A DNA stretch of 63,635 bases, counting the filler, from Octopus bimaculoides (lineage: Eukaryota): assembly GCF_001194135.2 (NCBI RefSeq). It is 6 parts of 5 records of this genome, joined end to end, with 100 filler letters (N's around TTAATTAATTAA, not from the genome) between each part and the next. Parts side by side here need not be neighbours in the genome. Positions count along the whole stretch, not along the records: positions 17,991 to 38,543 come from NC_069000.1; 5 more parts are not named here. One strand, given 5' to 3'. Positions 18,456 through 39,179 of the stretch are shown in pieces (position 1 is the stretch's first letter; every line of letters starts with the position of its first letter). The position numbers and the translations under genes are program-made. The notes beneath the pieces are model-generated. The model had not been told where the DNA came from. It ran no database searches and was given only the letters and a program-made list of their open reading frames with translations.

Positions 18456-19631
18456 CCCCACTAAGTCCGTTCGATAGCTGCAAAGCTCTTTCTGTTGTAT
18501 TTGAGATATACGGATAATTATTATTATTATTATTCTGCTGTATATAGCCGTGAGGCTTCGTGCTGTTATATATGCATAATTCTTTGTCTGTTGTATTCAT
18601 ATAAAATCTTGTTTGTTTCAGTCTTAGTATACATTCGCTAGCTATTTCCCAATAGCTTAATAACAGTATTAGCGCCTCCAAATTGAGTGGTCTCAGTGGT
18701 AATGGTGCGAAATCAATATGGTATTTTGGGTCATTGACTGACGGGGAAAACTCAGGTGGGAATTTTCCGTGTATCGCGTCTTTGTCTAAATTTCCCGTCT
18801 GTTAAGTTTTCGTTTTGTTTCCCGTTTGCTCGTTCTGCGCTTTCATCTAATTTTTTCTCCTTGTTGTATTCTGTATGTTCAACCCTTAATATATATAAAT
18901 NNNNNNNNNNNNNNNNNNNNNNNNNNNNNNNNNNNNNNNNNNNNNNNNNNNNNNNNNNNNNNNNNNNNNNNNNNNNNNNNNNNNNNNNNNNNNNNNNNNN
19001 NNNNNNNNNNNNNNNNNNNNNNNNNNNNNNNNNNNNNNNNNNNNNNNNNNNNNNNNNNNNNNNNNNNNNNNNNNNNNNNNNNNNNNNNNNNNNNNNNNNN
19101 NNNNNNNNNNNNNNNNNNNNNNNNNNNNNNNNNNNNNNNNNNNNNNNNNNNNNNNNNNNNNNNNNNNNNNNNNNNNNNNNNNNNNNNNNNNNNNNNNNNN
19201 NNNNNNNNNNNNNNNNNNNNNNNNNNNNNNNNNNNNNNNNNNNNNNNNNNNNNNNNNNNNNNNNNNNNNNNNNNNNNNNNNNNNNNNNNNNNNNNNNNNN
19301 NNNNNNNNNNNNNNNNNNNNNNNNNNNNNNNNNNNNNNNNNNNNNNNNNNNNNNNNNNNNNNNNNNNNNNNNNNNNNNNNNNNNNNNNNNNNNNNNNNNN
19401 NNNNNNNNNNNNNNNNNNNNNNNNNNNNNNNNNNNNNTATATATATATATATATGTGTGTATATATATATATATATATGTGTGTATATATATATATATAT
19501 ATGTGTGTATATATGTATATATATATATATATGTATATATATGTATGTATATGCATGTATGTATATGTATGTATATATGCATGTATGTATATGTATATAT
19601 ATATATATGTATGTATGCATGTATGTACTTT

Positions 19632-21270: not shown

Positions 21271-24200
21271 GTCTTATACAACATCCTGTGACTTGGAATA
21301 CCATAAGCATAGACATAATGACAGGAAACCGAGCGAAGTAATTGCAAATATTAGCAATATGGGGTAAGATAGCATGGGTCTCACAAGTATGGATAACAAT
21401 AATTGTAGAAGACATAATGAAAGAAGTCCAAAGAATTCTAATGTAATTAATAAGATCCACGTTAGAAGAAATAACGTAAATGACGACGCAAGTGTTGTAA
21501 ACTCTAATGATAATGACATTGGGGATAGTCATGTCTTTGAGGACAACAACGTTAGCAATGAAAGTAACAAAAAAATAATGACATGATTATGGCAGTCCGA
21601 CTAAGAAGAAAGCTTAACACACATAAGACGAGCCAAGTTGAAAATGGTATGCTAAATAATGTAATTGTAAAATTTCAGAGCAGTATCCCAGCATACCTGC
21701 AGTCCAATGACTGAAATAAGTAGATGATAAAAGACAAGGTACACATACATACATACATACATACATACATACATACATACATACATACATACATACACAC
21801 GTACATACATACTACACACTTTTATTGTTTTTTTTTAGTTGTTTTAATTATTGAACTATGGCCATACATGGGCACCGCCTCGAAGGGTTTTTGTCGAATA
21901 AATCGATTACAGCATTTATTTTAAACTTTGGTACTTATTCTATTGTCTCTTTTTGCCGAAACAGTAGGTTACGGGGACATAAACAAATTAAGGTTGTGTG
22001 TCAAACAATGTGGGAAAATATAAACACAAAGAAGAGCGCGCACACCTACACATACATACATAACATATATAACACGTTGAAACTGTGTGGACTGACTTCC
22101 CAATTGGCAGGCTGCTGGGGTGAAGAATCCTTGTTTGTGAGGATAAAATGTTTAATTTGGGCAGCTCAAGTTGTGATGTCGCTCTGACGCGGTAATTATT
22201 ATGACTATATAGTTCACAGTAGTCATGAGGTTGGGTTTTTGTAGCTGAAGTTTCAACTTGATGGCGACAGTCACCGACCAAGAAATAAAACTAGTAAAAG
22301 ATTGCGCGCGTGCGATTATATATATGCTTGTCTTTATGCTATTAACACATGAACTTTTCAATGACAATTGAATAAATATATGTACACGTACTTATTGATC
22401 TGCGTATACACTTACCGCGTAAGATTTTTAAAGTAGTATTTTAACATTCTTCATTGCAGTGCCGACACACCATGCACTCAGCTAAACGATTTAGATTTTC
22501 AACAAATGGGATTTTAATGCAAACAGATGTTCATAGCGCAATGGAGGTCATATAACAAAATTACAGGAGTACCTCGCGTAGAATGTTAAAAGCAAAATCA
22601 AAAACTAAATCAGTTACACTAAAAGAAGGAAAAAGAAATATATAAAAAAATATACAGATCACTTTGTTTTATTAATGATGATCCGTGTATAACATTTTGA
22701 ACGCTCAAACACCGGTATAGGGCTAAGCCTTTAACATTTCTAAAGGCTTCAATTGTACTTTTAAATATCTGAGGCGTACTTAACCTTGATACTCCCTTGC
22801 GGGAAACCTTTTCAAAAGGACTGAGGTACTTGGTTGCTTCTACCTAGCAGAATTGTGTCATAACTCAGATACAAGCACGTGAGCGGGCATATATGTACCA
22901 TGATGCACACACAAAACATATGCACAGACACTCAGGCTTAGACGCGCAAAGTGCATACTCACACATGCACATGTGCAGATAAGCAGCACAAACATTCAGA
23001 TGCGTGCTTATGAATTAAAAGTGTAATTTCAAATTATGATTACCAGAGCACACATACACATACTTGTAATATGCGTCTATCTATCTATCTATCTATGCAT
23101 ATGTGTGTGTGTGTGTGTGTGTGTGCGTGAGTATATATAGTCACACACAATGTATATAGATAGTTTATTTATGGGTCTCATATACGCAAAGAAAGACTTC
23201 ATTCGACTCACAGAAAATCAAACTTCCATACGCACAGACGCACGCAAGCATACGCGTATTTGAGTGTGGTATGTAGTGACTAGACGTGCACGAATGTAAC
23301 AAAGTACATCTTAATTCTTTCACTGAAAGCATTTATCTAATGAAAGTGTTGAAGAATTGATCTGGATTCACGTAGGGCAATGAGCAATATGTATGTGAAC
23401 TAAAAGAATGAATCTTGAATATATTCATACAAAGGCAATATATATATTTATCATTTGCTAATCTTTCGGGACATTTAAATATTTGTGGGCTACGATATTT
23501 TGTAGAAACTTGAAACAAATGTTGTTTTCCATAAATAGTTTTGGATGAAAAACAAAATAAAATTGTGTTTACCGTATTTCTTTTCCGTTTACAAACATAA
23601 CTGTCGACTAAATTTTTACTAATAATAATAGTGTTGGCTTCCAATTTTGGCGTCAGGCCAGCAATTTTAGGATGTGGTAAGTCGATTACTTCAATACCAG
23701 TGCTCGACTAATATCTATTTTATTCACCTCGAAAGGATGAAAGACAAAGTTAACGTTGCCGGGATTTGAACCCAGAATGTAAAGAGCTGGAACAATATGA
23801 TAATGATGATATTGATGATGATGGTGGTGATGATGATGATGATAATAATTTCTAATATTATATCGAAGATGATTTCTAATATTATATCCAGACTTCAGTA
23901 CTTGATTAATTCTTATTTTATAACCCGAAAATTGGGTGGGTGAGAGTTTGTATAGTCGATGTATTCGAACCCGAGATCTGGAGTAATACGTATATTCTAG
24001 CGACTCCCGAAGCATGAACGGCAGAGCTGACTTCAGGTAGCAATTGAGGTGTAAGGAACTGAAATTTTGCAAAGTGTTTAGTGAGATGCTCCTCCAATTC
24101 TACCAATTCATCGCTCTGATGATAATGTTAATGATTTCTAACATAAGTACATAATAAAACATTTTAGGAAATGTAGGTAGTCAAGTAAATGGTCGCCAAC

Positions 24201-26176: not shown

Positions 26177-26501
26177 TGCTCAAGACTACTGTATATACAT
26201 CCACAATTTGAATTTGTGTCCATGGAAATCCACAGCCGGTGTTCAATGGTCTGCGTGGAATGAACTTTGTTTTAATGGTGTGCGTATAAGAATGAGACAC
26301 TGTTTAACTTCAGATCAAGCAGCATGTGCATGCAGTGGCGTACCTATAGAAATTGATGCATGTCCATCAGGAAATAGGGTAGCATCTATCCGTGAAGATA
26401 TTGTAAAACGAGTCAAGGATTTAGTGTTGGAGTATTACATAAATGGTGTATACAAGGGCTCTCAGTCACTGAAAGAAATAATAGAAATAGCTTTGCAATA
26501 A
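26177..26501 (+). CDS. Exon encoding a thrombospondin type 1 (TSP1) repeat; probably a terminal coding exon
   Basis: Strong acceptor TTTCGTTTCTTTGCAG|T. The phase-2 frame reads AQDYCIYIHNLNLCPWKSTAGVQWSAWNELCFNGVRIRMRHCLTSDQAACACSGVPIEIDACPSGNR...ALQ*, with the WSxW..C..G.R.R.R.C TSP1 signature. No good donor lies before the stop. Confidence 0.8.
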
Positions 26502-26916: not shown

Positions 26917-27458
26917 NNNNNNNNNNNNNNNNNNNNNNNNNNNNNNNNNNNNNNNNNNNNNNNTATATATATATATATTAAAACAGTGGACAGAATTTAA
27001 GCATAAGTTCTACAAGTGAAGATTCTGTCATTCCAAATAGTTGTATAAGAGTTCTTTCGAAGGTTTGCTCTGCGTACGCTATTCTAATTCTCAAGTCATC
27101 TGATGTTCTGTTGTTAGAAAACATCGAAGTCAGTGATACCCAATAAAGTATTTATCCATTTCTCTTGTATTGAGTCATTTTTTAAAATTTTAACTAACCT
27201 TACTGCAACTGTATCTCATTTTTAAAACAAAGACTTCGTCTCTCTGCACTACTTATCTGTCTGTCTGTCTGTCTGTCTGTCTGTGTATCTATGTAACTAA
27301 TCTCACACTCTCTCCCATTCTCTCTATGTATTTGTGTGTGTGTATATGAATGTATCAAAACACGTGACTGGAAAATATTTTTGGTATCATTTACATACTA
27401 TGTATGTATGTACCTATATATTTAAACATATGTACACACACATACATAGATACATACG

Positions 27459-27589: not shown

Positions 27590-28510
27590 CCTAACAACTT
27601 TAACGTGGCCTCGAGCGAAGCTTTCACTTGAGAATTTACCCTTCAAGGGTGAATTTTCAAATTTTAAAATCTTATTTAATAATTGTCTAGAAAAATGGAT
27701 ATTCCTTCTAAGACTGCCAGCGTTCCCATCCTTGAATTAGAACTGGAATTTCCACTCTTGCTATCAACGAAAAGACAAGTGGTAAAGGAAGGCAGAAACA
27801 ATGAAAACGCTCATAAAACAATGAACAGTGCAACCACGACTATCACTTCTCTTGTCACCACCTCTATCACTTCTGTCACGAAAACTGCTACCACCAACAA
27901 CAATGTCACAGATAAACTAAATAATTTTGCTTCTGTTTTAAAGCAAATGAAATATTTAATGTCTTTCTCAACGGAAGAATTTCTACAATCTAAACAATTA
28001 TTATACAAAGAAAACAGAACCATTAAATATTTTGCAAGACATCCCCCCACCCACAATAATTTACAAAACTCTGAGCCTAAAAAATAAAAGATTAGAACAG
28101 TCCAATCAAGAAACAGTTGAGAAATGTCTACAGCCCATATAGGCTTTTAAAACATATTGCAAGAAACAAAAGATTTGCCACGATTGAGATAAGATTTGAT
28201 ACGAAAGAACGCGCTAAGGAACACTCGACAAAAAGCCTGGAATGCGGGGAATTTATAATGATTCCCACTTACTTCGGTCGACGAGTGACAAAGATAAAAA
28301 TTAAAGATGTGCTCCCTGAAATAGAAATAATATGGCTAGTGTCAGCCATCTGTTATGATTTTGTAGATCAAATCAACATAAAAATTGTCGTCTTGTTACG
28401 GCAAAACTGGATTGGATAGGGGTTGGCTTTGCTGATTCAGGCTAATCAGGAGGCAATCGAAAATTTCCCAAATTTGATTCAACTTTCAGATGGCACAACC
28501 CTACGAATGG
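27590..28510 (+). mobile_element. Non-LTR retrotransposon ORF1 (gag-like) remnant
   Basis: Broken ORFs 27683-28087 and 28117-28419 (IEIRFDTKERAKEHST...PTYFGRRVTKIKIKDVLPEIEIIWLVSA) resemble L1/Tx1-type ORF1s recalled from octopus; this is family-level recollection only. Confidence 0.5.
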
Positions 28511-29128
28511 CACAACCCTACAAAGAATAAGCTCTCGGGTCGATGTGCTCGACTAAAGGCGGTGCTCCAGCATGGCCGCAGTCAAATGACTGAGACAAGT
28601 AAAGAATATAAGTAGATCCGGCACAGGATTGGTTTAAGGTAAGGCACAAACGGAGTTTAAAATTTACGACAATTGTTTCGGCAGGATTTTATTTATGTAT
28701 TCACAGATTACACAATAGCTTGAATTTTCCTTCTTCAGGTAAAATTTTAAACAGCTATAAAGAAGTGAGGTAAAGCTTTGATGATGATATATCCAACAAC
28801 TTGGATGGATAAGTGTTATTTTAAAACAGAGCATTCGAAGTTATGAAGAAATCAAAATTATAACGCTATGCGAGAAACAAAGAGATCAAACAACTCTATT
28901 ATTTCGAAGTGATATCTAAATTAGTTTATAACCATATCTTGCTATGAAAGTAGACAAGCTGTAGCCAAGATATGTCATTAAGGTAATTGAAACCAGGAAG
29001 ATATCCTTTTAGTTGAGATAAATTAAAACAGACCCCAGGACAACAGGAACGCATAAAACTGTCATTACCTTTTCACACTTTTACACATAAACACATACAA
29101 ACATATGTATTCATATGTACACACACAT

Positions 29129-32201: not shown

Positions 32202-32619
32202 CGTCACGCACACACGCAAACACACACAGAAACACGCACACAAACACGCACACACACATATACTTCGCTCACACGCGCGCACATACACATACCTATGCAA
32301 GCACGCACACATACGTATATAACCAAGTTAGAAAATAATATAAGTCGATCAATGATATGAATATAGATAAATACGTTACGGAGTGATGAATGGATGACGT
32401 AAGCCGAGAATTCACAAATTCATGAAATTTCATTCTTAGCTAGACAAAAGCAACAAAATGCTAAAGGGAATTTTCAGCAACAGTCAAATTTAATGGAAAA
32501 TAATTTCAAGAAATTGAAAATTACTTTCTCAAAATTATCTTATATTAGTGAAGATCTGAGATTATTTGCAAGCATACATAAGCTACATACTCGCACTCAC
32601 ACACAGATATATACATACG

Positions 32620-33537
32620 CATACACGTTATTCGGGTAACATAAAAATCTGGAGTTCTGGAGCTGATGAAATCTTTGAACGGACTTTCAGCATAGGTTTG
32701 ATTTTTGAACTCCTTCTCTCCCAGGAAACGAAGAAGGTGCTTGAAAAAGTGATAGTCGGCAGGAGAAAGGTGTAAGGAATAAGCTGGGAGGGGAAGAACT
32801 TCGTAGCCAAGTTCCCTCAACTTCTGAAGCATCATTAGTGAAACGTGTGGTCGAGCATTGTCATGAAGAATGACCAGCCCTCTTTTGTTGAGCAATCTGG
32901 GACGGAGGAGTTGCTGTTTTTCGTTCATTTTGGCAATTTCATGGCAGTATGTTTCTGCAGTAATAGTTTTCTGTGTTTTAAGAAGTTATAGTGGATGGGA
33001 CCTGCATTACACCACCAAACAGTCACTATAGCCTTCTTTTGGAAGAGCTTGGGTTTACGGAAGGGTTTCGGTGCTTCATTTTCGTCCAACCACTGCAGAA
33101 AACATTTTTTATTATCGTACAGAATCCAATTTTCATCGCAAGTTACAATACGGTCGAGGAATGGATCGGTTTGTTTACGGAGAAGAAGTGACGAGCAAAT
33201 TTCATATCTGTGTATTTTCTGATTTTCACTCAAATCGCGTGACACAAATTCGTCGAGCTTTTTTGATTTTCCGATCGCATGCAAATGGTCGCAGTCAGTT
33301 TTATGGTTAACTTGAAGTTCTTTTGCCAGTTCTCGAGTGGTTTTTACGTGGATCTTTCTCAATGATGGTCTTTAATTGACCGTTATTGATGACAGATGGG
33401 CGTCTACTACCCTCACGATCTTCAAAGCTCAGGTCTCCAATGCGAAATCGTTTAAACCATTTTCAAGCTGACCACTCACTGGTCATTCCTTCACCATTCA
33501 AAACTCTGGAAAAATCCGGTGCAAATTCCTCATGGTT
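32620..33537 (-). mobile_element. Mariner (DD34D, SETMAR-like) transposase pseudogene
   Basis: FLDRIVTCDENWILYDN, ILHDNARPHV and PAYSLHLSPADYHFF motifs in ORFs 32925-33362 and 32545-32928, which are frameshifted. Confidence 0.95.
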
Positions 33538-34422
33538 NNNNNNNNNNAAAATACTAAAAAATTTTAAAAGGGTTTTGTATGATTGTGTATAGAGGAATAT
33601 ATTATTTAAAAGAGCTCCAACTCTGTTTTTTATGTTTTATTTATATTCTCATAAAATTAATGTCGGATATAGAATATGGAATATATAATATAAATAGTAA
33701 AATGAAATGAAGTATTGAATGTCTTATTGAATATATGAAATATTGAGTATTAAATATAGAGTATTAAATATAACATATATATATATATAGACGACCACGG
33801 CGGAATTTGAACTCAGAACGTCAAGACGGACGAAAGACCGTAAATCATTTTGCCCGCCTTATAGTATATTGTTTTATTTTTGATATATCATGTTAAGCAG
33901 ATGCTACCTGTACTTAAAATTCTGACCCAGTTATGCACAACTCTTATAGTACCAACGATCACAACAACAACAAGAACAACATAAACTAGTATTCCTTTTT
34001 TCTTAATTTTCATACATTTTTTCTTTGTTTAGCCTGTACAAATAGGCAATGGGCTGTAACGACAAAAGGAAACAAAGCAGAAAGAGAAATAGAATGAAGA
34101 GGAGGGGGAAGAGGTGAATAAGACAAGAAAGAACTAAATAAATATATAAAGACGAAACACTGTCTGAGAAATGAAAAGAAATCATAATTATTTTGCTTTC
34201 CACGCTGTTGGCTTGTCACAATATATATGTAAGAGGGATGCACGAAGTGATTATCTTGATCATTAGTAGTTATAGCAGTCATTAATTTCAATAGTGTTCG
34301 TACATATGAAAAACAAAGCAAAACAAAAACTTGTTTTATAACTATTATTATTACTTTTAATTCCATAAGCCATCGATTAATCCGAACGTTTGCAGGATTT
34401 TCCTCCATCAAAGGGGTAAAAA

Positions 34423-34427
34423 ATGAG
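34423..34427 (+). CDS. Start-codon exon (whole exon 34396-34427) of a candidate secreted-protein gene
   Basis: TTTGCAG|GATTTTCCTCCATCAAAGGGGTAAAAAATGAG|GTAAGG. A-rich context before the ATG, and a phase-2 end that joins 36866 in frame. Confidence 0.55.
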
Positions 34428-34928
34428 GTAAGGCTGTGGCAAAATTTTTTAAAAACTGTTCATAGGTTACTGTTTTTAATCTTTATTCATAAATTTTTAT
34501 TCATACACTTCACACGTTTACTCTTTTGCTGCTTTTTATCTCTTGCACTGTGGTCATGCTGGAAGCCCGCCTTGATGGGTCTATTCCATCATATCGACAC
34601 TAATACTTATTTGAGTGTGATACGTTTTCATCACTTTCTGTATTACGGTATACAAAGGAACATAACAGAAATAACACCAGTTTTTACATCGGTATCTAAC
34701 CAAAGCACAAACACGCACGCACGAACGCACGAAGACATACACACACATAGGCACGCGCGCATCAATGTATTTATCATGAGTTTCTGTATAGTATTTATCT
34801 ACCAATTTTCATTCGCAAGAAATTAATCTGTTTCAGACTTTAGTAGGAAAATACATGCCTAAAGTATTACGTTTGGAATAGTACAGGGAATCATGTCGTC
34901 GCAAGGCAAAAATTATAATCACACATAT

Positions 34929-34967
<39 letters not shown>

Positions 34968-35151
34968 CTGCATTATAGTTTCTGATGTAGACACAAAGGA
35001 AACTGTTAGTCAAAAAACAGCGACCCCGGTGCTCAACTGGCGCTTATTTTGTAGAACCCGAAAGGATAAAAGAGAAAGTGACTCCGGCAGCGTTTGAACT
35101 CAGAACGTAAAGTAGGTAGAAATCCTACAAAGTATTTTGCCACCTTAGTAA

Positions 35152-35215
<64 letters not shown>

Positions 35216-35384
35216 GTTGTTGTTGATGATGATGATGATGATGATGATGACGATGGTGATAATGATTTCAATTTTTGGTACAAGGCCAGCAATTTCGGGG
35301 TGGGGAACAGTCGATTACATCAACCCCAGTAAACATCTGGAATTTATTTTATCGACCTCGAAAGGATAAAAGGCAAAGTCGAGA

Positions 35385-35778
35385 GTGTAATAGAGAACGA
35401 TCAGTTTAAGGTGTTATGAGACTTTATCCTATAAACAGATAATGAACTTCAAGCTAGGCGACCAGATATTATCATACTAGACAAAAGAAAAAAAAAGAGT
35501 GCATCATTTGCATAGATATGGTTATGTCTGCAGACATGGATGTAGTTTTCAAAGAACAGAAGAAAATGGAAAAATACCAGAATTTAGCCAGGGAAACACT
35601 TAGACTGTGCAACGTTTCAACAAAAGTAATCCCGTTTTTTATAGGTATCCTGGATATCGTCACCAACAAATCTGATAATTTCCTTACTGAGATTCGTGTA
35701 ATAAAGATTGGTGATTTAATTAAAAAATCTGCTCTACTGAAGACAACAAGGATTGTAAGAAAGATCCTCGATATTTAA
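35385..35778 (+). mobile_element. R4/Dong-clade LINE RLE fragment
   Basis: RRPDIIILDK...KEQKKMEKYQNLARE...VIPFFIGILD...KSALLKTTRIVRKILDI*. Confidence 0.85.
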
Positions 35779-35903
35779 GAGAACTGGTTATGATCCAGTA
35801 ATATATATGTTAAATTCCGAATGTAACACGTTCGTGCATGTCATGAATAACAATAACAACAACAACAACAACGACGACGACGACGACGATGATAATAATG
35901 ATG

Positions 35904-35961
<58 letters not shown>

Positions 35962-35965
35962 TAAT

Positions 35966-36460
35966 AAAGTCCGTTTATTGATTGACATGAGCATACCCTG
36001 TGACCATAATATGTCCGGAAAAGAATTTGATAAACTAAGAAAATATTAAGATTTGCTCATCGAAACCGAAAAGATGTGGCAATACTAATGATTGTAGGAG
36101 CAGTTGGAATGATAAAAAAAAAAGGGAACTGAAAATTATTTAAGAATGATCCCTGACTTACCATCCATACAGGAGTGCAAAAGCTTGTCTTAACTGGTAC
36201 ATCGCACGTATTGAGAAGAGCATTGTCGCTGTGAATTTTCTTCCCCTTTCCCCCTTTATTTTCTTCGATTACTTTTTAATTTTTAATTTTTCATTTTTTA
36301 TTTTCCCTCTTTGTCTTTCTTCCCCTTTTTCTCTATCACATGACTTTGTAAATGAGCAATTTGGTGCGTTTATCTTGATGGCCTACCAATGTATGCAGTG
36401 CATTTCTCTGCCCTAGGTGTCAGGGAGACACTCCGCAAGAAATGGAAATAAAATTGAAAG
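35966..36460 (+). mobile_element. R4/Dong-clade LINE 3' fragment between (TAA)n tracts
   Basis: LLIDMSIPCDHNMSGKEFDKLRKY*DLLIETEKMW...IVGAVGMIKK, with (TAA)n at about 35900-35965 and 36461-36500. Confidence 0.85.
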
Positions 36461-36501
<41 letters not shown>

Positions 36502-36865
36502 CACCACTAGGCAGTTATACAGTTATATACAGACATCTACTGGGTAATATGAGACTTCGGTGTGAAAATATACAAGAAGTGGCTGAAACATATACAAAAT
36601 GTAGTAAAAAATACTGACCACAGTCCAAGCTAGGCAAAGAGATCGAATAAACAATTCAGTCATAATATTCAAAGACTTATCAAGAAAAAAAATATGCACG
36701 TTGATATATACCTGCACCCTTTCTCACCAAAATATTTTTCTCCCCCCCCCCCCAAAGAAGGGGGGAAACTGTCAAAGTACAAGGAGCTTGAAATTGAAAT
36801 ATTCAAGAAGAGTATGGACCTAAATGCTGTATTCTGATTTCGTATGTTTACCTTTTATTCTCCAG

Positions 36866-36912
36866 ATTATTTGTTGCATTGTTATTGACTGGCATAGCTA
36901 TCGTTCTTCAAG
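36866..36912 (+). CDS. 47-nt exon encoding a signal-peptide hydrophobic core (LFVALLLTGIAIVLQ)
   Basis: Acceptor TTTACCTTTTATTCTCCAG and consensus donor AG|GTAAGT; phase 2 to phase 1. Confidence 0.7.
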
Positions 36913-37095
36913 GTAAGTAATATTTCATTCGTCAAAACTTCAATAATTTTGTTTACATTTTTATTCTAACGCCTTATTTCCGAACTACCTGCCATGTTTT
37001 CAACGGCTGCCAAAACTCCCACAAATCACAGTCTTTAATAAGGTGATTTTCGATACCCGAAAAGAGATGTCCACGGTTCGAACACCGTTTATAAT

Positions 37096-37142
<47 letters not shown>

Positions 37143-37240
37143 CAGAGAGACAGAGAGAGAGAGACAGAGAGACGACGGGGAAAGGCGAAGGAGAAAGAAA
37201 AAAAAGGAAGTAATGATAGAAGTATTAATATGAATTTCAG

Positions 37241-37462
37241 GGTGGCGAGCTAGAAGAATCGTTAGCACGCCAGGCGAAATGCTTAGCGCTTTTTCGTCAC
37301 CCGTTATGTTCTGAGTTCAAATTCCGCCGTGGTCGATTTTACCTTTCATCCTTTCGGGATCGATTAAATGAGTACCAGTTACGCACTGGTGTCGATGTAA
37401 TCGACTTAATCCCCTGTTTGTCCCCTTCATGTTTAGCCCCTTGTGGGCAATAAAGAAATAAT
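37241..37462 (+). mobile_element. SINE family B, full length
   Basis: GGTGGCGAGCTAGAAGAATCGTTAGCACGCC...GTTCTGAGTTCAAATTCC...CTTTCATCCTTTCGGGATCGAT...TAAAGAAATA. Confidence 0.9.
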
Positions 37463-37906
37463 TAATATAAATTTAGCGAGAAACTAACATGTGAAGAGAA
37501 CATAGAGCTTCTACAGTATTTTTCTTCACAACGAGATGAAGACTAAAATTTTATTATAGTTACGATATTGTACATTATGAAAATGAGTTCAAGTACAGCA
37601 TATGGAATCAATATAGTGAAATTACTTGAAATGAAAATTGACTAAGTACAGTTACTTCTTGAAGTACTATTTGTTTTCTACAGACCTTCAAACATATTTT
37701 CAGTATAATTCATCATATTGTGTTTGTCATATGTATTGATATTTCCAAAGTCGAGAAATAACCGAATAATATAAACTATTATGAAAAAAAAATTGATTTT
37801 ATAAAATCTTTTTAAGAAACTTAATTTTTATGAAATAGCACTTATAAAACGTGTATATAATAATACATTATTTTTTCTTATTCATTCATTTCAACATGTA
37901 TTGCAG

Positions 37907-37922
37907 GTTGCCTTGTAAACAG
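37907..37922 (+). CDS. 16-nt micro-exon (G-C-L-V-N-S/R)
   Basis: Acceptor TTTTTTCTTATTCATTCATTTCAACATGTATTGCAG and consensus donor AG|GTAAGT; phase 1 to phase 2, in frame with 36866-36912. Confidence 0.65.
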
Positions 37923-39179
37923 GTAAGTCGATTTATACTAATATATTCATATGCATGATTTTGCAAGCGTCATTAAGAATTTCATATAGGAGGACATCTT
38001 GACGAAATATTTTAATTTTGCGCATGAAATGTTTACTAAAGCTTCGATGTCATACTGCTATATATTCGTATAACGGCAATATATTGTGGATACTGAAATA
38101 CAAATGACTACGTCCACTGAATTAAATAATAAAGCAGGATGGTCAGGTATATGTCATCGCAATCAATGCTGAACTTGTGACTAAATACGGTAAAAAGAGT
38201 AGATGGCCTCATAACGGTTTCATTCGTATTTATTTGAAAATGTTTGATTCTTAAAAAAAAACAAAACAAAGGGAAGCAAAAAATATGATAGGCCGACCGC
38301 GAGTCCGCTGCCCTAACCACTGGGCCATTGCGCCTCCATATATATAGCGATGCGTCCTGCCCAGCTCTTCGAAACGCCGGTGTTAAAACGGGGGTAGCTG
38401 ATGAAGAAGAATGTTCTCTATGTGGCTTGTGTGTTTTCTCGTCTACGTTTTGTTTGCAATGTCCTGTACCCAGATATGCACCTATACATACAGGTGGATG
38501 TCGGTATGCACATACCTGTACGTATATATGCATATACTCATTTNNNNNNNNNNNNNNNNNNNNNNNNNNNNNNNNNNNNNNNNNNNNTTAATTAATTAAN
38601 NNNNNNNNNNNNNNNNNNNNNNNNNNNNNNNNNNNNNNNNNNNTTCATCGTTGTCCCCACTTTTGTTTTTTTTTCTGCTTTGTTTTCGACCCCCTCGAAA
38701 AGAAAAACTCTACATTTGTATTTTGTCCCCTCTGTGTTGAGCCCTGTGTGGCTAATAAAGAAACCTATCTATATCTATCTATCTAGCTATCTATCTAGTT
38801 AGCTAGCTAGCGAGCACAGACATCTATCTGTCCATCTATGTAGCAAATACACACACAATTTTGTTGCCATAACAATCCTGTTGGACAAAATGCACTGCAG
38901 TATTTTTTTCGGTTCTTCACATTCTCAATTGAAATGGTGTCGAGATCAGTGCTTACGTATCTTTCCCTCTACACACATATATTGCCACAACCTGGATGCG
39001 CCACTGCGTAAAAGATAAGAAAACCAAGGAGATATTTATGCCTGCTTGCAATTACACGGGCACCTACAAATATCCCGAAAAACTATAACACGAACTGACT
39101 GTAAACGACTGGTATTGTCGTCGTAAACAGAAAACTACAAAACTGACAACAGCCCATACATTGTCAACATCTTATGCAG

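What the first reader, a model, noticed from the sequence alone, without database searches (positions are those of the whole stretch)
34396..37922. Signal peptide assembled from three tiny exons (5, 47 and 16 coding nt)
Seen: three + strand exons with strong splice sites (donors AG|GTAAGG, AG|GTAAGT, AG|GTAAGT) splice in frame to MRLFVALLLTGIAIVLQGCLVN(S/R), a textbook signal peptide. None is long enough to appear in the ORF track. Inference: this is the 5' end of a real secreted-protein gene with micro-exon architecture, which automated annotation would easily miss.
Basis: partly seen in the sequence, partly recalled or inferred. Interest (0 to 1): 0.7.

Follow-up and report, generated by a model that had tools for sequence, protein, structure and literature searches.

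The report
Probable gene start: split signal peptide
Three very short plus-strand segments with near-perfect splice signals join into a textbook secretion signal, which is most likely the start of an unidentified secreted-protein gene in an animal (probably cephalopod) genome, but no transcript or relative could be found to prove it.

Summary
ATGAG|GTAAGG (ATG 34423-34425), 36866-36912 and 37907-37922 join in frame to MRLFVALLLTGIAIVLQGCLVN. The three donors are the three best of 2430 GT sites in the piece. Both internal acceptors have pyrimidine tracts above the 95th percentile. A TAA lies two codons before the ATG.

In 20,000 simulated 20-kb strands, no three-exon chain arose and no chain of any length passed a strict signal-peptide test. 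The number of strong donors alone is not significant.

Context fits a gene start. A plus-strand animal haem peroxidase gene ends at 26501, 7.9 kb upstream. The segments are single copy. The gaps between them carry SINEs and microsatellites, as introns do. The second intron is phase 1, at the predicted cleavage site.

The interpretation could not be verified. The piece ends 621 nt after exon 3, so the gene's body is unseen. The source organism is absent from every searchable collection, so the empty look-ups say nothing. Competing upstream acceptors would give longer, stop-filled exons.

Verdict: probably a real 5' end of a secreted or membrane protein gene (about 0.55). It is an annotation-level result of an ordinary kind, and a wider "micro-exon architecture" is not shown. 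Interest is low to moderate.

The parts
34396..34427 (+). It has an in-frame TAA at 34417-34419 and the ATG at 34423-34425 with A at -3, so only 5 nt are coding. The donor is GAG|GTAAGG at 34428. The upstream acceptor (tttgcAG, 34394-34395) is weak, so this may instead be a first exon that begins further upstream.
   Evidence: Donor score is 11.4 (rank 3 of 2430). Acceptor matrix score is -0.4 and pyrimidine fraction is 0.58.
34428..36865 (+). Proposed intron 1 (2438 nt, phase 2, inside codon 2). It holds a CA microsatellite (34930-34963), SINE fragments on the minus strand (35017-35110, 35309-35382), AAT repeats, short ORFs that look like transposon remnants, and a poly-C/poly-G tract (36742-36765).
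36866..36912 (+). Exon 2 (47 nt). It encodes the last base of codon 2, then LFVALLLTGIAIVLQ, which holds the whole hydrophobic core (L3-L16), and the first base of G18. The acceptor is ttaccttttattctcCAG, with a CTGAT branch-point-like motif 27 nt upstream and no AG in between. The donor is AAG|GTAAGT.
   Evidence: Acceptor score is 7.0, pyrimidine fraction is 0.72 (above the 95th percentile) and donor score is 11.6 (rank 2). The segment is single copy in the piece.
36913..37906 (+). Proposed intron 2 (994 nt, phase 1, inside codon G18, which is the predicted -1 residue of the cleavage site). It holds a GA microsatellite (37098-37133) and a full SINE copy (about 37230-37470, plus strand).
   Evidence: Phase-1 introns are known to be over-represented at signal-peptide cleavage sites (PMC1626468).
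37907..37922 (+). Exon 3 (16 nt). It encodes the rest of G18, then CLVN and two bases of an S/R codon. The acceptor is ttttttcttattcattcatttcaacatgtattgCAG, with no AG in the last 30 nt. The donor CAG|GTAAGT is the perfect 9-base consensus.
   Evidence: Donor score is 12.8 (rank 1 of 2430). Pyrimidine fraction is 0.72, but the short-range matrix score is only 1.1.
37923..38543 (+). Start of proposed intron 3 (phase 2), cut off by the end of the piece. No credible fourth exon lies here. The last 250 nt are a SINE-like repeat on the minus strand followed by a microsatellite.
26177..26501 (+). Context: the terminal coding exon of an upstream plus-strand animal haem peroxidase gene. It encodes a TSP1-like cysteine domain and a C-terminal tail, with the stop at 26499-26501. 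Candidate poly(A) signals lie at 26977 and 27142. This shows that the preceding plus-strand gene ends 7.9 kb before the finding.

Best explanation
The three segments are the first coding exons of a plus-strand protein-coding gene whose body lies beyond the end of the piece.

Inferred steps:
- Transcription starts shortly upstream of, or one exon upstream of, 34396.
- Translation starts at the ATG at 34423. It has A at -3, an in-frame TAA two codons earlier, and no other ATG in the exon.
- After ATGAG, a 2.4-kb phase-2 intron is removed.
- The 47-nt exon supplies the hydrophobic core (L3-L16).
- A 1-kb phase-1 intron sits inside codon G18.
- The 16-nt exon supplies G18 and the first residues of the mature protein (CLVN, then S or R).
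- The peptide would act as a cleavable ER signal peptide. It would be bound by SRP and probably cut after Leu-Gln-Gly18.
- The near-consensus donors would be what lets the spliceosome recognise such short exons.

What is shown: the sequence elements, their rank among all candidate sites, and their improbability under null models. What is inferred: the splicing, the translation, the secretion and the identity of the protein. One guess is a tandem haem peroxidase paralogue.
For: - The elements are present exactly as described.
- The three donors rank 1-3 of 2430 GT sites.
- The acceptors of exons 2 and 3 have pyrimidine fraction 0.72 over -40..-5, above the 95th percentile of 1009 AG sites. Both have branch-point-like motifs and AG-free zones.
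- This is the only such chain on either strand and in the reversed sequence.
- Null rates are 1/800, 0/500, 1/500 and 8/20,000. The 20,000-strand run gave no three-exon chain and no strict hit.
- The peptide passes a strict n/h/c-region test that only 0.08% of random open 22-codon ORFs pass. Only 2 of 331 real ORFs in the piece pass it, and both are microsatellite translations.
- The h-region is 14 residues with mean Kyte-Doolittle hydropathy 2.98.
- There is an in-frame stop before the ATG.
- The exon regions are single copy, while the proposed introns carry SINEs and microsatellites.
- The preceding plus-strand gene ends at 26501.
- The phase-1 intron at the cleavage site matches a known bias (PMC1626468).
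- Constitutively spliced micro-exons have stronger splice sites (PMC4317164).
Against: - There is no transcript, junction or orthologue evidence of any kind.
- The rest of the gene is outside the piece.
- The architecture is rare, so its prior is low: 5 coding nt, then 47 nt, then 16 nt, and two introns inside 68 coding nt. Exons of 51 nt or less are about 6% of mammalian coding exons, and those of 6-21 nt are far rarer (PMC4317164).
- The thresholds and the strict signal-peptide test were defined after seeing the data.
- Simple null models understate the structure of real repeat-rich DNA.
- A fourth equally strong donor at 28639 has no coding exon, so strong donors do occur by chance or inside repeats.
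- Competing acceptors exist at 36758 and 37684.
- The exon 1 acceptor is weak.
Confidence: 0.55

Rival explanations
1. Chance assembly. In AT- and T-rich repeat-laden DNA, three strong GTAAG sites happen to lie near AG sites, and the T-rich codons between them happen to read as a hydrophobic peptide. No transcript exists.
For: - The donor count alone is not significant: 4 AGGTAAG against 1.7 expected, and 10 of 100 shuffles reach 4.
- In simulations, 12-14% of strands have at least 3 donors scoring 11 or more.
- A fourth strong donor at 28639 has no open exon.
- At looser thresholds, 2-7% of null strands give a lenient signal-peptide-like chain.
- 22% of real contiguous ORFs in the piece pass the lenient hydrophobicity test.
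- The real architecture is rare, so a rare chance event competes with it.
Against: - At the observed strengths, chains arise in about 0.04-0.2% of null strands, never with three exons and never passing the strict signal-peptide test.
- The peptide is not low-complexity, unlike the two strict hits among real ORFs.
- Both internal acceptors have top-5% pyrimidine tracts.
- All the segments avoid the repeats that surround them.
Confidence: 0.22
2. There is a real spliced plus-strand transcript, but not the reader's coding model. The same donors pair with the upstream acceptors 36758 and/or 37684 to give exons of 155 nt and 239 nt. The RNA is then non-coding, a 5' UTR, or encodes only a short product such as the 35-residue ORF MRLF...VLQDLQTYFQYNSSYCVCHMY*.
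For: - Acceptor 36758 sits behind a 12-C tract, with pyrimidine fraction 0.83 and matrix score 8.7.
- Acceptor 37684 scores 4.2, against 1.1 for 37907.
- Exons of 155 and 239 nt are the normal size for exon definition (PMC4317164).
Against: - Both acceptors at 36758 and 36761 are AAG, which is a disfavoured -3 base.
- If the micro-exon acceptors were not used, a strict signal peptide starting at the first ATG would be a coincidence with probability about 0.1-0.6%.
- Acceptor 37907 has the better long-range pyrimidine tract, 0.72 against 0.61.
Confidence: 0.15
3. The segments are internal exons of a longer plus-strand gene read in the other open frame (..FSSIKGVKNE|IICCIVIDWHSYRSS|RLPCKQ..). 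The ATG is then incidental.
For: That frame is open across all 95 nt. Exon 1 is preceded by a possible acceptor.
Against: - About 8% of random 31-codon stretches of this composition are open, by my calculation from the base composition.
- The only upstream plus-strand gene seen, the peroxidase, ends with a conserved tail and a stop at 26501.
- The exon 1 acceptor is weak.
- The alternative-frame peptide found nothing in the protein collection, although that collection lacks the source organism.
- The peptide has no recognisable features.
Confidence: 0.05

Closest known systems
Ordinary secreted-protein genes with a phase-1 intron at the signal-peptide cleavage site (Nielsen & Wernersson 2006, PMC1626468)
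   Same: The signal-peptide core sits on its own small exon. That exon ends in phase 1, inside the codon for the predicted -1 residue (G18).
   Different: Here the start codon is also separated from the core by an intron after only 5 coding nt, in phase 2. That is not the phase-0 'start-codon intron' the paper describes. The next exon is only 16 nt.
Constitutive and neural micro-exons of animals (51 nt or less, or 3-27 nt; Li et al. 2015, PMC4317164; PMC13174390)
   Same: The exon sizes are 47 and 16 nt. The splice sites are unusually strong, and a pyrimidine tract lies close to the 3' splice site. These are the compensating features reported for constitutive micro-exons. Exons of 6-21 nt were the under-annotated class.
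   Different: Known micro-exons mostly lie inside folded or interaction domains and often preserve the reading frame. These two are not multiples of three and lie at the very N-terminus. The flanking introns are long (1-2.4 kb), whereas those of constitutive micro-exons tend to be short. From my own knowledge, not tested here: vertebrate L1CAM has a 15-nt neuron-specific exon just after its signal peptide, which is the nearest single-gene precedent.
Micro-exon genes (MEGs) of Schistosoma (PMC10526429)
   Same: They encode secreted proteins with an N-terminal signal peptide. Very short exons are separated by introns of 0.1-5 kb, and automatic annotation had trouble with them.
   Different: MEGs have 10-20 micro-exons, mostly multiples of three and typically 15 bp. 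Here only two short internal exons are visible, and neither is a multiple of three. There is no sequence relationship, and the lineage is different.
Animal haem peroxidases with a C-terminal TSP1-like domain (the upstream neighbour; relatives P0123 and P0134)
   Same: They are secreted. The full-length relative P0134 begins MRLAVWLGVFLLARFASG, an 18-residue signal peptide that also starts MRL and ends in G. Such genes can occur in tandem, so the finding could be the 5' end of a paralogue.
   Different: The signal-peptide resemblance (7 of 18 positions, my count) is within what unrelated signal peptides show. No peroxidase exon lies downstream within the piece. In the one related genomic contig seen (L002), no second peroxidase follows within 10 kb.

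Membership tests
Eukaryotic cleavable N-terminal (Sec/SPase I) signal peptide | Short positively charged n-region with no acidic residues | tested here: met
   The n-region is Met-Arg, then the hydrophobic core.
Eukaryotic cleavable N-terminal (Sec/SPase I) signal peptide | Uninterrupted hydrophobic h-region of about 7-15 residues | tested here: met
   LFVALLLTGIAIVL is 14 residues with no charged residue and mean Kyte-Doolittle hydropathy 2.98.
Eukaryotic cleavable N-terminal (Sec/SPase I) signal peptide | c-region with small or neutral residues at -3 and -1 | tested here: met
   Leu16-Gln17-Gly18|Cys19 satisfies the simple -3/-1 rule coded. This is a hand rule, not SignalP, which was not available.
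Eukaryotic cleavable N-terminal (Sec/SPase I) signal peptide | It is the N-terminus of a protein that is really made and translocated | not testable with these tools
   No transcript or protein data exist for the source organism. The empty look-ups are uninformative, because even its transposon copies are absent from the collection. The best mariner hit is 58% identical.
Micro-exon (51 nt or less; strict sense 27 nt or less) | Internal exon of that length flanked by canonical AG...GT | tested here: met
   The exons are 47 nt (36866-36912) and 16 nt (37907-37922) with AG/GT. Only the 16-nt exon meets the strict definition.
Micro-exon (51 nt or less; strict sense 27 nt or less) | Inclusion in mature mRNA (junction reads) | not testable with these tools
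   No RNA data are reachable. The metagenome scans were empty.
Schistosoma-type micro-exon gene (MEG) | Ten to twenty very short exons make up most of the coding sequence | not testable with these tools
   The piece ends 621 nt after exon 3.
Schistosoma-type micro-exon gene (MEG) | Micro-exons are mostly multiples of three (symmetric) | tested here: not met
   Neither 47 nor 16 nt is divisible by three. The MEG description is in PMC10526429.
Animal haem peroxidase gene (tandem paralogue of the upstream neighbour) | An_peroxidase (PF03098) domain encoded downstream of the signal peptide | not testable with these tools
   Only 621 nt follow exon 3. tblastn with P0123, P0126 and P0134 finds only the terminal exon at 26190-26432.

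The most novel reading that the evidence does not exclude
The gene is built largely of micro-exons, so it would be a cephalopod counterpart of the schistosome micro-exon genes for secreted proteins. Alternatively, it belongs to a family, for example tandem haem peroxidases, whose signal peptides are routinely split over tiny exons. In that case they would be systematically missing from cephalopod annotations, and many predicted proteins would wrongly appear non-secreted.
Probability: 0.08. Interest if true: 0.5.

Novelty: new member of a known kind. Interest (0 to 1): 0.25.

Why it matters
If real, this is a gene start that exon-size-limited annotation would probably truncate, so a secreted protein would be predicted as non-secreted or missed altogether. 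That matters for secretome and venom or salivary catalogues of a poorly annotated animal genome, and as a test case for gene finders that handle micro-exons. It does not reveal a new mechanism. Signal peptides, phase-1 introns at cleavage sites and strongly flanked micro-exons are all known.

Tried and rejected
- **Signal peptide against the protein collection.** Padded with X, no protein shared three 5-residue words with it.
- **Peroxidase exon plus alternative-frame peptide.** A concatenated query of the two scored nothing.
- **Exact look-up of ten window ORFs.** None is in the collection.
- **Calibration with the mariner ORFs.** The best hit is only 58% identical. The source organism is therefore not represented, and the negative results above carry no weight.
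- **Literature.** Searches for the peptide string and for the run accession SRR27666080 found no papers.
- **Rfam and ARAGORN on the piece.** Neither found anything.
- **Metagenome collection.** An exact scan with exon 2 plus its donor found nothing. A protein-guided scan with the peroxidase exon found no relatives.
- **Walking upstream in contig L002.** The aim was to see how a related peroxidase encodes its signal peptide.
- **L002 itself.** It shares no DNA similarity with the piece and has no second peroxidase within 10 kb downstream.
- **A fourth exon in 37923-38543.** No credible candidate was found.
- **The TSP1-like exon and the finding as one gene.** Rejected. The exon ends in a conserved tail and a stop, and entering exon 1 in phase 0 hits the TAA.
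- **The chain starting at 35241 (MMMTMVIM...).** Rejected. It comes from a trinucleotide repeat and abuts a SINE.
Full report
**1. What is in the sequence**

- Exon 1 is 34396-34427. It reads GATTTTCCTCCATCAAAGGGGTAAAAAATGAG and is followed by GTAAGG. The ATG is at 34423-34425, with A at -3. An in-frame TAA lies at 34417-34419, and there is no other ATG in the exon.
- Exon 2 is 36866-36912 (47 nt). It follows ...gtttaccttttattctccAG and is followed by GTAAGT.
- Exon 3 is 37907-37922 (16 nt). It follows ...ttttttcttattcattcatttcaacatgtattgcAG and is followed by GTAAGT.
- The 68 coding bases read MRLFVALLLTGIAIVLQGCLVN, with AG left over.
- The intron phases are 2, 1 and 2.
- The other frame (FSSIKGVKNE|IICCIVIDWHSYRSS|RLPCKQ) is open through all three segments. 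The third frame is closed.

**2. Is it more than chance?**

Splice signals:
- I scored every GT and AG in the piece (17991-38543) with generic metazoan matrices written from memory. The scores are therefore approximate.
- The three donors score 11.4, 11.6 and 12.8. They are ranks 3, 2 and 1 of 2430 GT sites on both strands.
- The fourth-ranked donor (28639, also on the plus strand) has no open exon in front of it.
- The count of AGGTAAG by itself is not significant. There are 4 against 1.7 expected, and 10 of 100 shuffles reach 4.
- Both internal acceptors have pyrimidine fraction 0.72 over -40..-5. That is above the 95th percentile (0.64) of 1009 plus-strand AG sites.
- Each internal acceptor has a branch-point-like motif about 27 nt upstream and no intervening AG (read).

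Chain search:
- I listed every chain of an ATG exon plus up to two internal exons of 60 nt or less, with introns of 60-5000 nt, that gives at least 20 open codons and passes a lenient signal-peptide test.
None appears in the reversed sequence.

Null models at those thresholds:
- Markov-1 simulation: 1 of 800 strands.
- Block shuffles: 0 of 500 and 1 of 500 strands.
- A large run of 20,000 strands: 8 hits, none with three exons and none passing a stricter n/h/c-region test.
- The strict test is passed by 0.08% of random open 22-codon ORFs. It is passed by 2 of 331 real contiguous ORFs in the piece, and both are microsatellite translations.

Caveats:
- The thresholds and the strict test were chosen after seeing the data.
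- At looser thresholds, 2-7% of null strands give a lenient hit.
- These nulls are simpler than real repeat-rich DNA.

It would be expected less than about once per genome under the Markov null (my multiplication of the component rates).

**3. Surroundings**

- The piece is AT-rich (about 34% G+C) and full of microsatellites, assembly gaps and transposon remains.
- There is a mariner-type transposase in two ORFs on the minus strand at 32545-33362 (PF01359, E = 1.5e-13; best database relative 58% identical).
- There are several copies of one SINE.
- The three exon regions are single copy within the piece. The proposed introns carry the SINEs and microsatellites, which is what introns look like in such a genome.
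- From memory, the SINE resembles the abundant octopus family. This was not tested. ARAGORN and Rfam found nothing.

**4. The upstream neighbour**

- The plus-strand ORF at 26208-26501 is part of an exon that starts at a strong acceptor (26177; score 7.2, pyrimidine fraction 0.78).
- A full HMMER search of 1.84 billion representatives found eight relatives.
- P0123 (769 aa) and P0126 (430 aa) are animal haem peroxidases (PF03098, E = 3e-150 and 4e-93). P0134 (807 aa) is the full-length member of P0126's cluster, and the Logan record marks it PF03098. Their C-terminus is the same TSP1-like cysteine domain plus tail.
- The alignment to the window is 33-35% identical. It runs past the cysteine domain into the tail.
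- A genomic relative (L002) has its peroxidase exons upstream of the same exon. Its acceptor is in the same place, with FFSNAETEC there against FLCSAQDYC here.
- So a plus-strand peroxidase gene ends at 26499-26501, with ATTAAA and AATAAA at 26977 and 27142. Its other exons lie upstream of the piece.
- The finding begins 7.9 kb further on, on the same strand. That is where a next gene could start.
- P0134 begins MRLAVWLGVFLLARFASG. This is a cleavable-looking signal peptide of the same length, also starting MRL and ending in G.
- That leaves open the idea that the finding is the start of a tandem peroxidase paralogue. Seven matches in 18 residues (my count) is not evidence of homology between signal peptides, and nothing downstream could be examined.

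**5. Competing gene models**

- Donor 36913 could also pair with acceptors at 36758 or 36761, behind a 12-C tract. Both are AAG, which is a poor -3 base. This would give a 155-nt exon.
- Donor 37923 could pair with 37684, giving a 239-nt exon.
- Both longer exons have stops in every frame.
- With the long exon 3, the ORF would end after 35 codons. With the long exon 2, it would end after 12.
- Exons of that size are the norm. Exons of 51 nt or less are about 6% of mammalian coding exons, and those of 6-21 nt are much rarer (PMC4317164).
- Against these models: if the micro-exon acceptors were not used, a first-ATG ORF that passes the strict signal-peptide test would be a 0.1-0.6% coincidence.

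**6. How it most likely works**

All of this section is inferred.
- Translation starts at 34423.
- The nascent Met-Arg plus 14-residue hydrophobic core is bound by SRP and inserted into the translocon.
- Signal peptidase cuts after Leu16-Gln17-Gly18.
- The mature protein begins Cys-Leu-Val-Asn.
- The near-perfect U1-complementary donors and close pyrimidine tracts make up for the short exon length. This is reported for constitutively spliced micro-exons (PMC4317164).
- Intron 2, in phase 1 at the cleavage site, is the typical signal-peptide intron (PMC1626468).
- The unusual parts are the intron after ATGAG and the 16-nt exon.

**7. Weighing**

- The prior for this architecture is low, so a rare real architecture competes with a rare coincidence.
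- Several secondary features point to real exons. These are single-copy exons among repeats, top-5% acceptors, a good start context, an upstream stop, the phase-1 intron at the cleavage site, and the position after a finished gene.

**8. External evidence**

- None could be obtained.
- The signal peptide, the alternative-frame peptide and the peroxidase exon found no close relative in the 5.8-billion-protein collection. Ten window ORFs are not in it by exact look-up.
- These results are uninformative, because even the organism's transposons are not represented.
- The metagenome scans were empty.

**9. Comparison and novelty**

- This is an ordinary kind of thing, the 5' end of a secreted-protein gene, in an uncommon arrangement.
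- It is not a schistosome-type micro-exon gene by the one testable criterion, because the exon lengths are not multiples of three (PMC10526429).
- 'Micro-exon architecture' of the whole gene is unproven.
- The result is annotation-level and of low to moderate interest.

Noticed in passing
window 26177-26501 (+): Terminal coding exon of an animal haem peroxidase gene. It encodes a C-terminal TSP1-like cysteine domain plus a conserved tail. The relatives are 33-35% identical peroxidases with the same C-terminus, and the exon's acceptor position is shared with a genomic relative (L002 10001-10375). The rest of the gene lies upstream of the piece, so the last intron is longer than 8 kb.
   Followed up: yes
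window 32545-33362 (-): Decayed mariner-type transposase in two ORFs that overlap by 4 nt (PF01359, E = 1.5e-13). The closest of 203 database relatives is only 58% identical, which shows that the source organism is not represented in the protein collection.
   Followed up: partly
window 37230-37470 (+), 35017-35110 (-), 35309-35382 (-), 33792-33854 (-), 23678-23777 (-); SINE-like sequence also near 38270-38340 (-): Several copies (73-81% identical) of one SINE-like repeat, two of them inside proposed intron 1 and one inside intron 2. From memory it resembles the abundant octopus SINE. ARAGORN and Rfam do not recognise it, and the organism was not established.
   Followed up: partly
window 28630-28645 (+): A fourth consensus donor (AAG|GTAAGG, score 11.3) lies on the same strand with stops in all frames upstream. 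It is either a chance site or carried by a repeat. It serves as an internal reminder that strong donors alone are not evidence of exons.
   Followed up: partly
window 36742-36765 (+): A run of 12 C, then AAAGAA, then 6 G, about 100 nt upstream of exon 2. It creates a very pyrimidine-rich but AAG-type alternative acceptor at 36758/36761.
   Followed up: partly
L001 156-2579 (Logan SRR27666080 transcript; protein P0134): A full-length 807-residue peroxidase with the same TSP1-like C-terminus starts MRLAVWLGVFLLARFASG. Its first three residues and length to the terminal G match the window's putative signal peptide. This is probably coincidence. The organism of that run is unknown.
   Followed up: partly
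window 35518-36049 (+) and 27683-28419 (+): Short ORFs that look like remnants of retrotransposon proteins. One pair lies inside proposed intron 1 and the others lie in the intergenic stretch. They have no Pfam match and no exact copy in the protein collection.
   Followed up: partly
window 18901-19437, 26917-26963, 33538-33547: Runs of N (assembly gaps) inside the piece, each flanked by microsatellites. The source is a draft assembly, so small exons could also hide in gaps.
   Followed up: no
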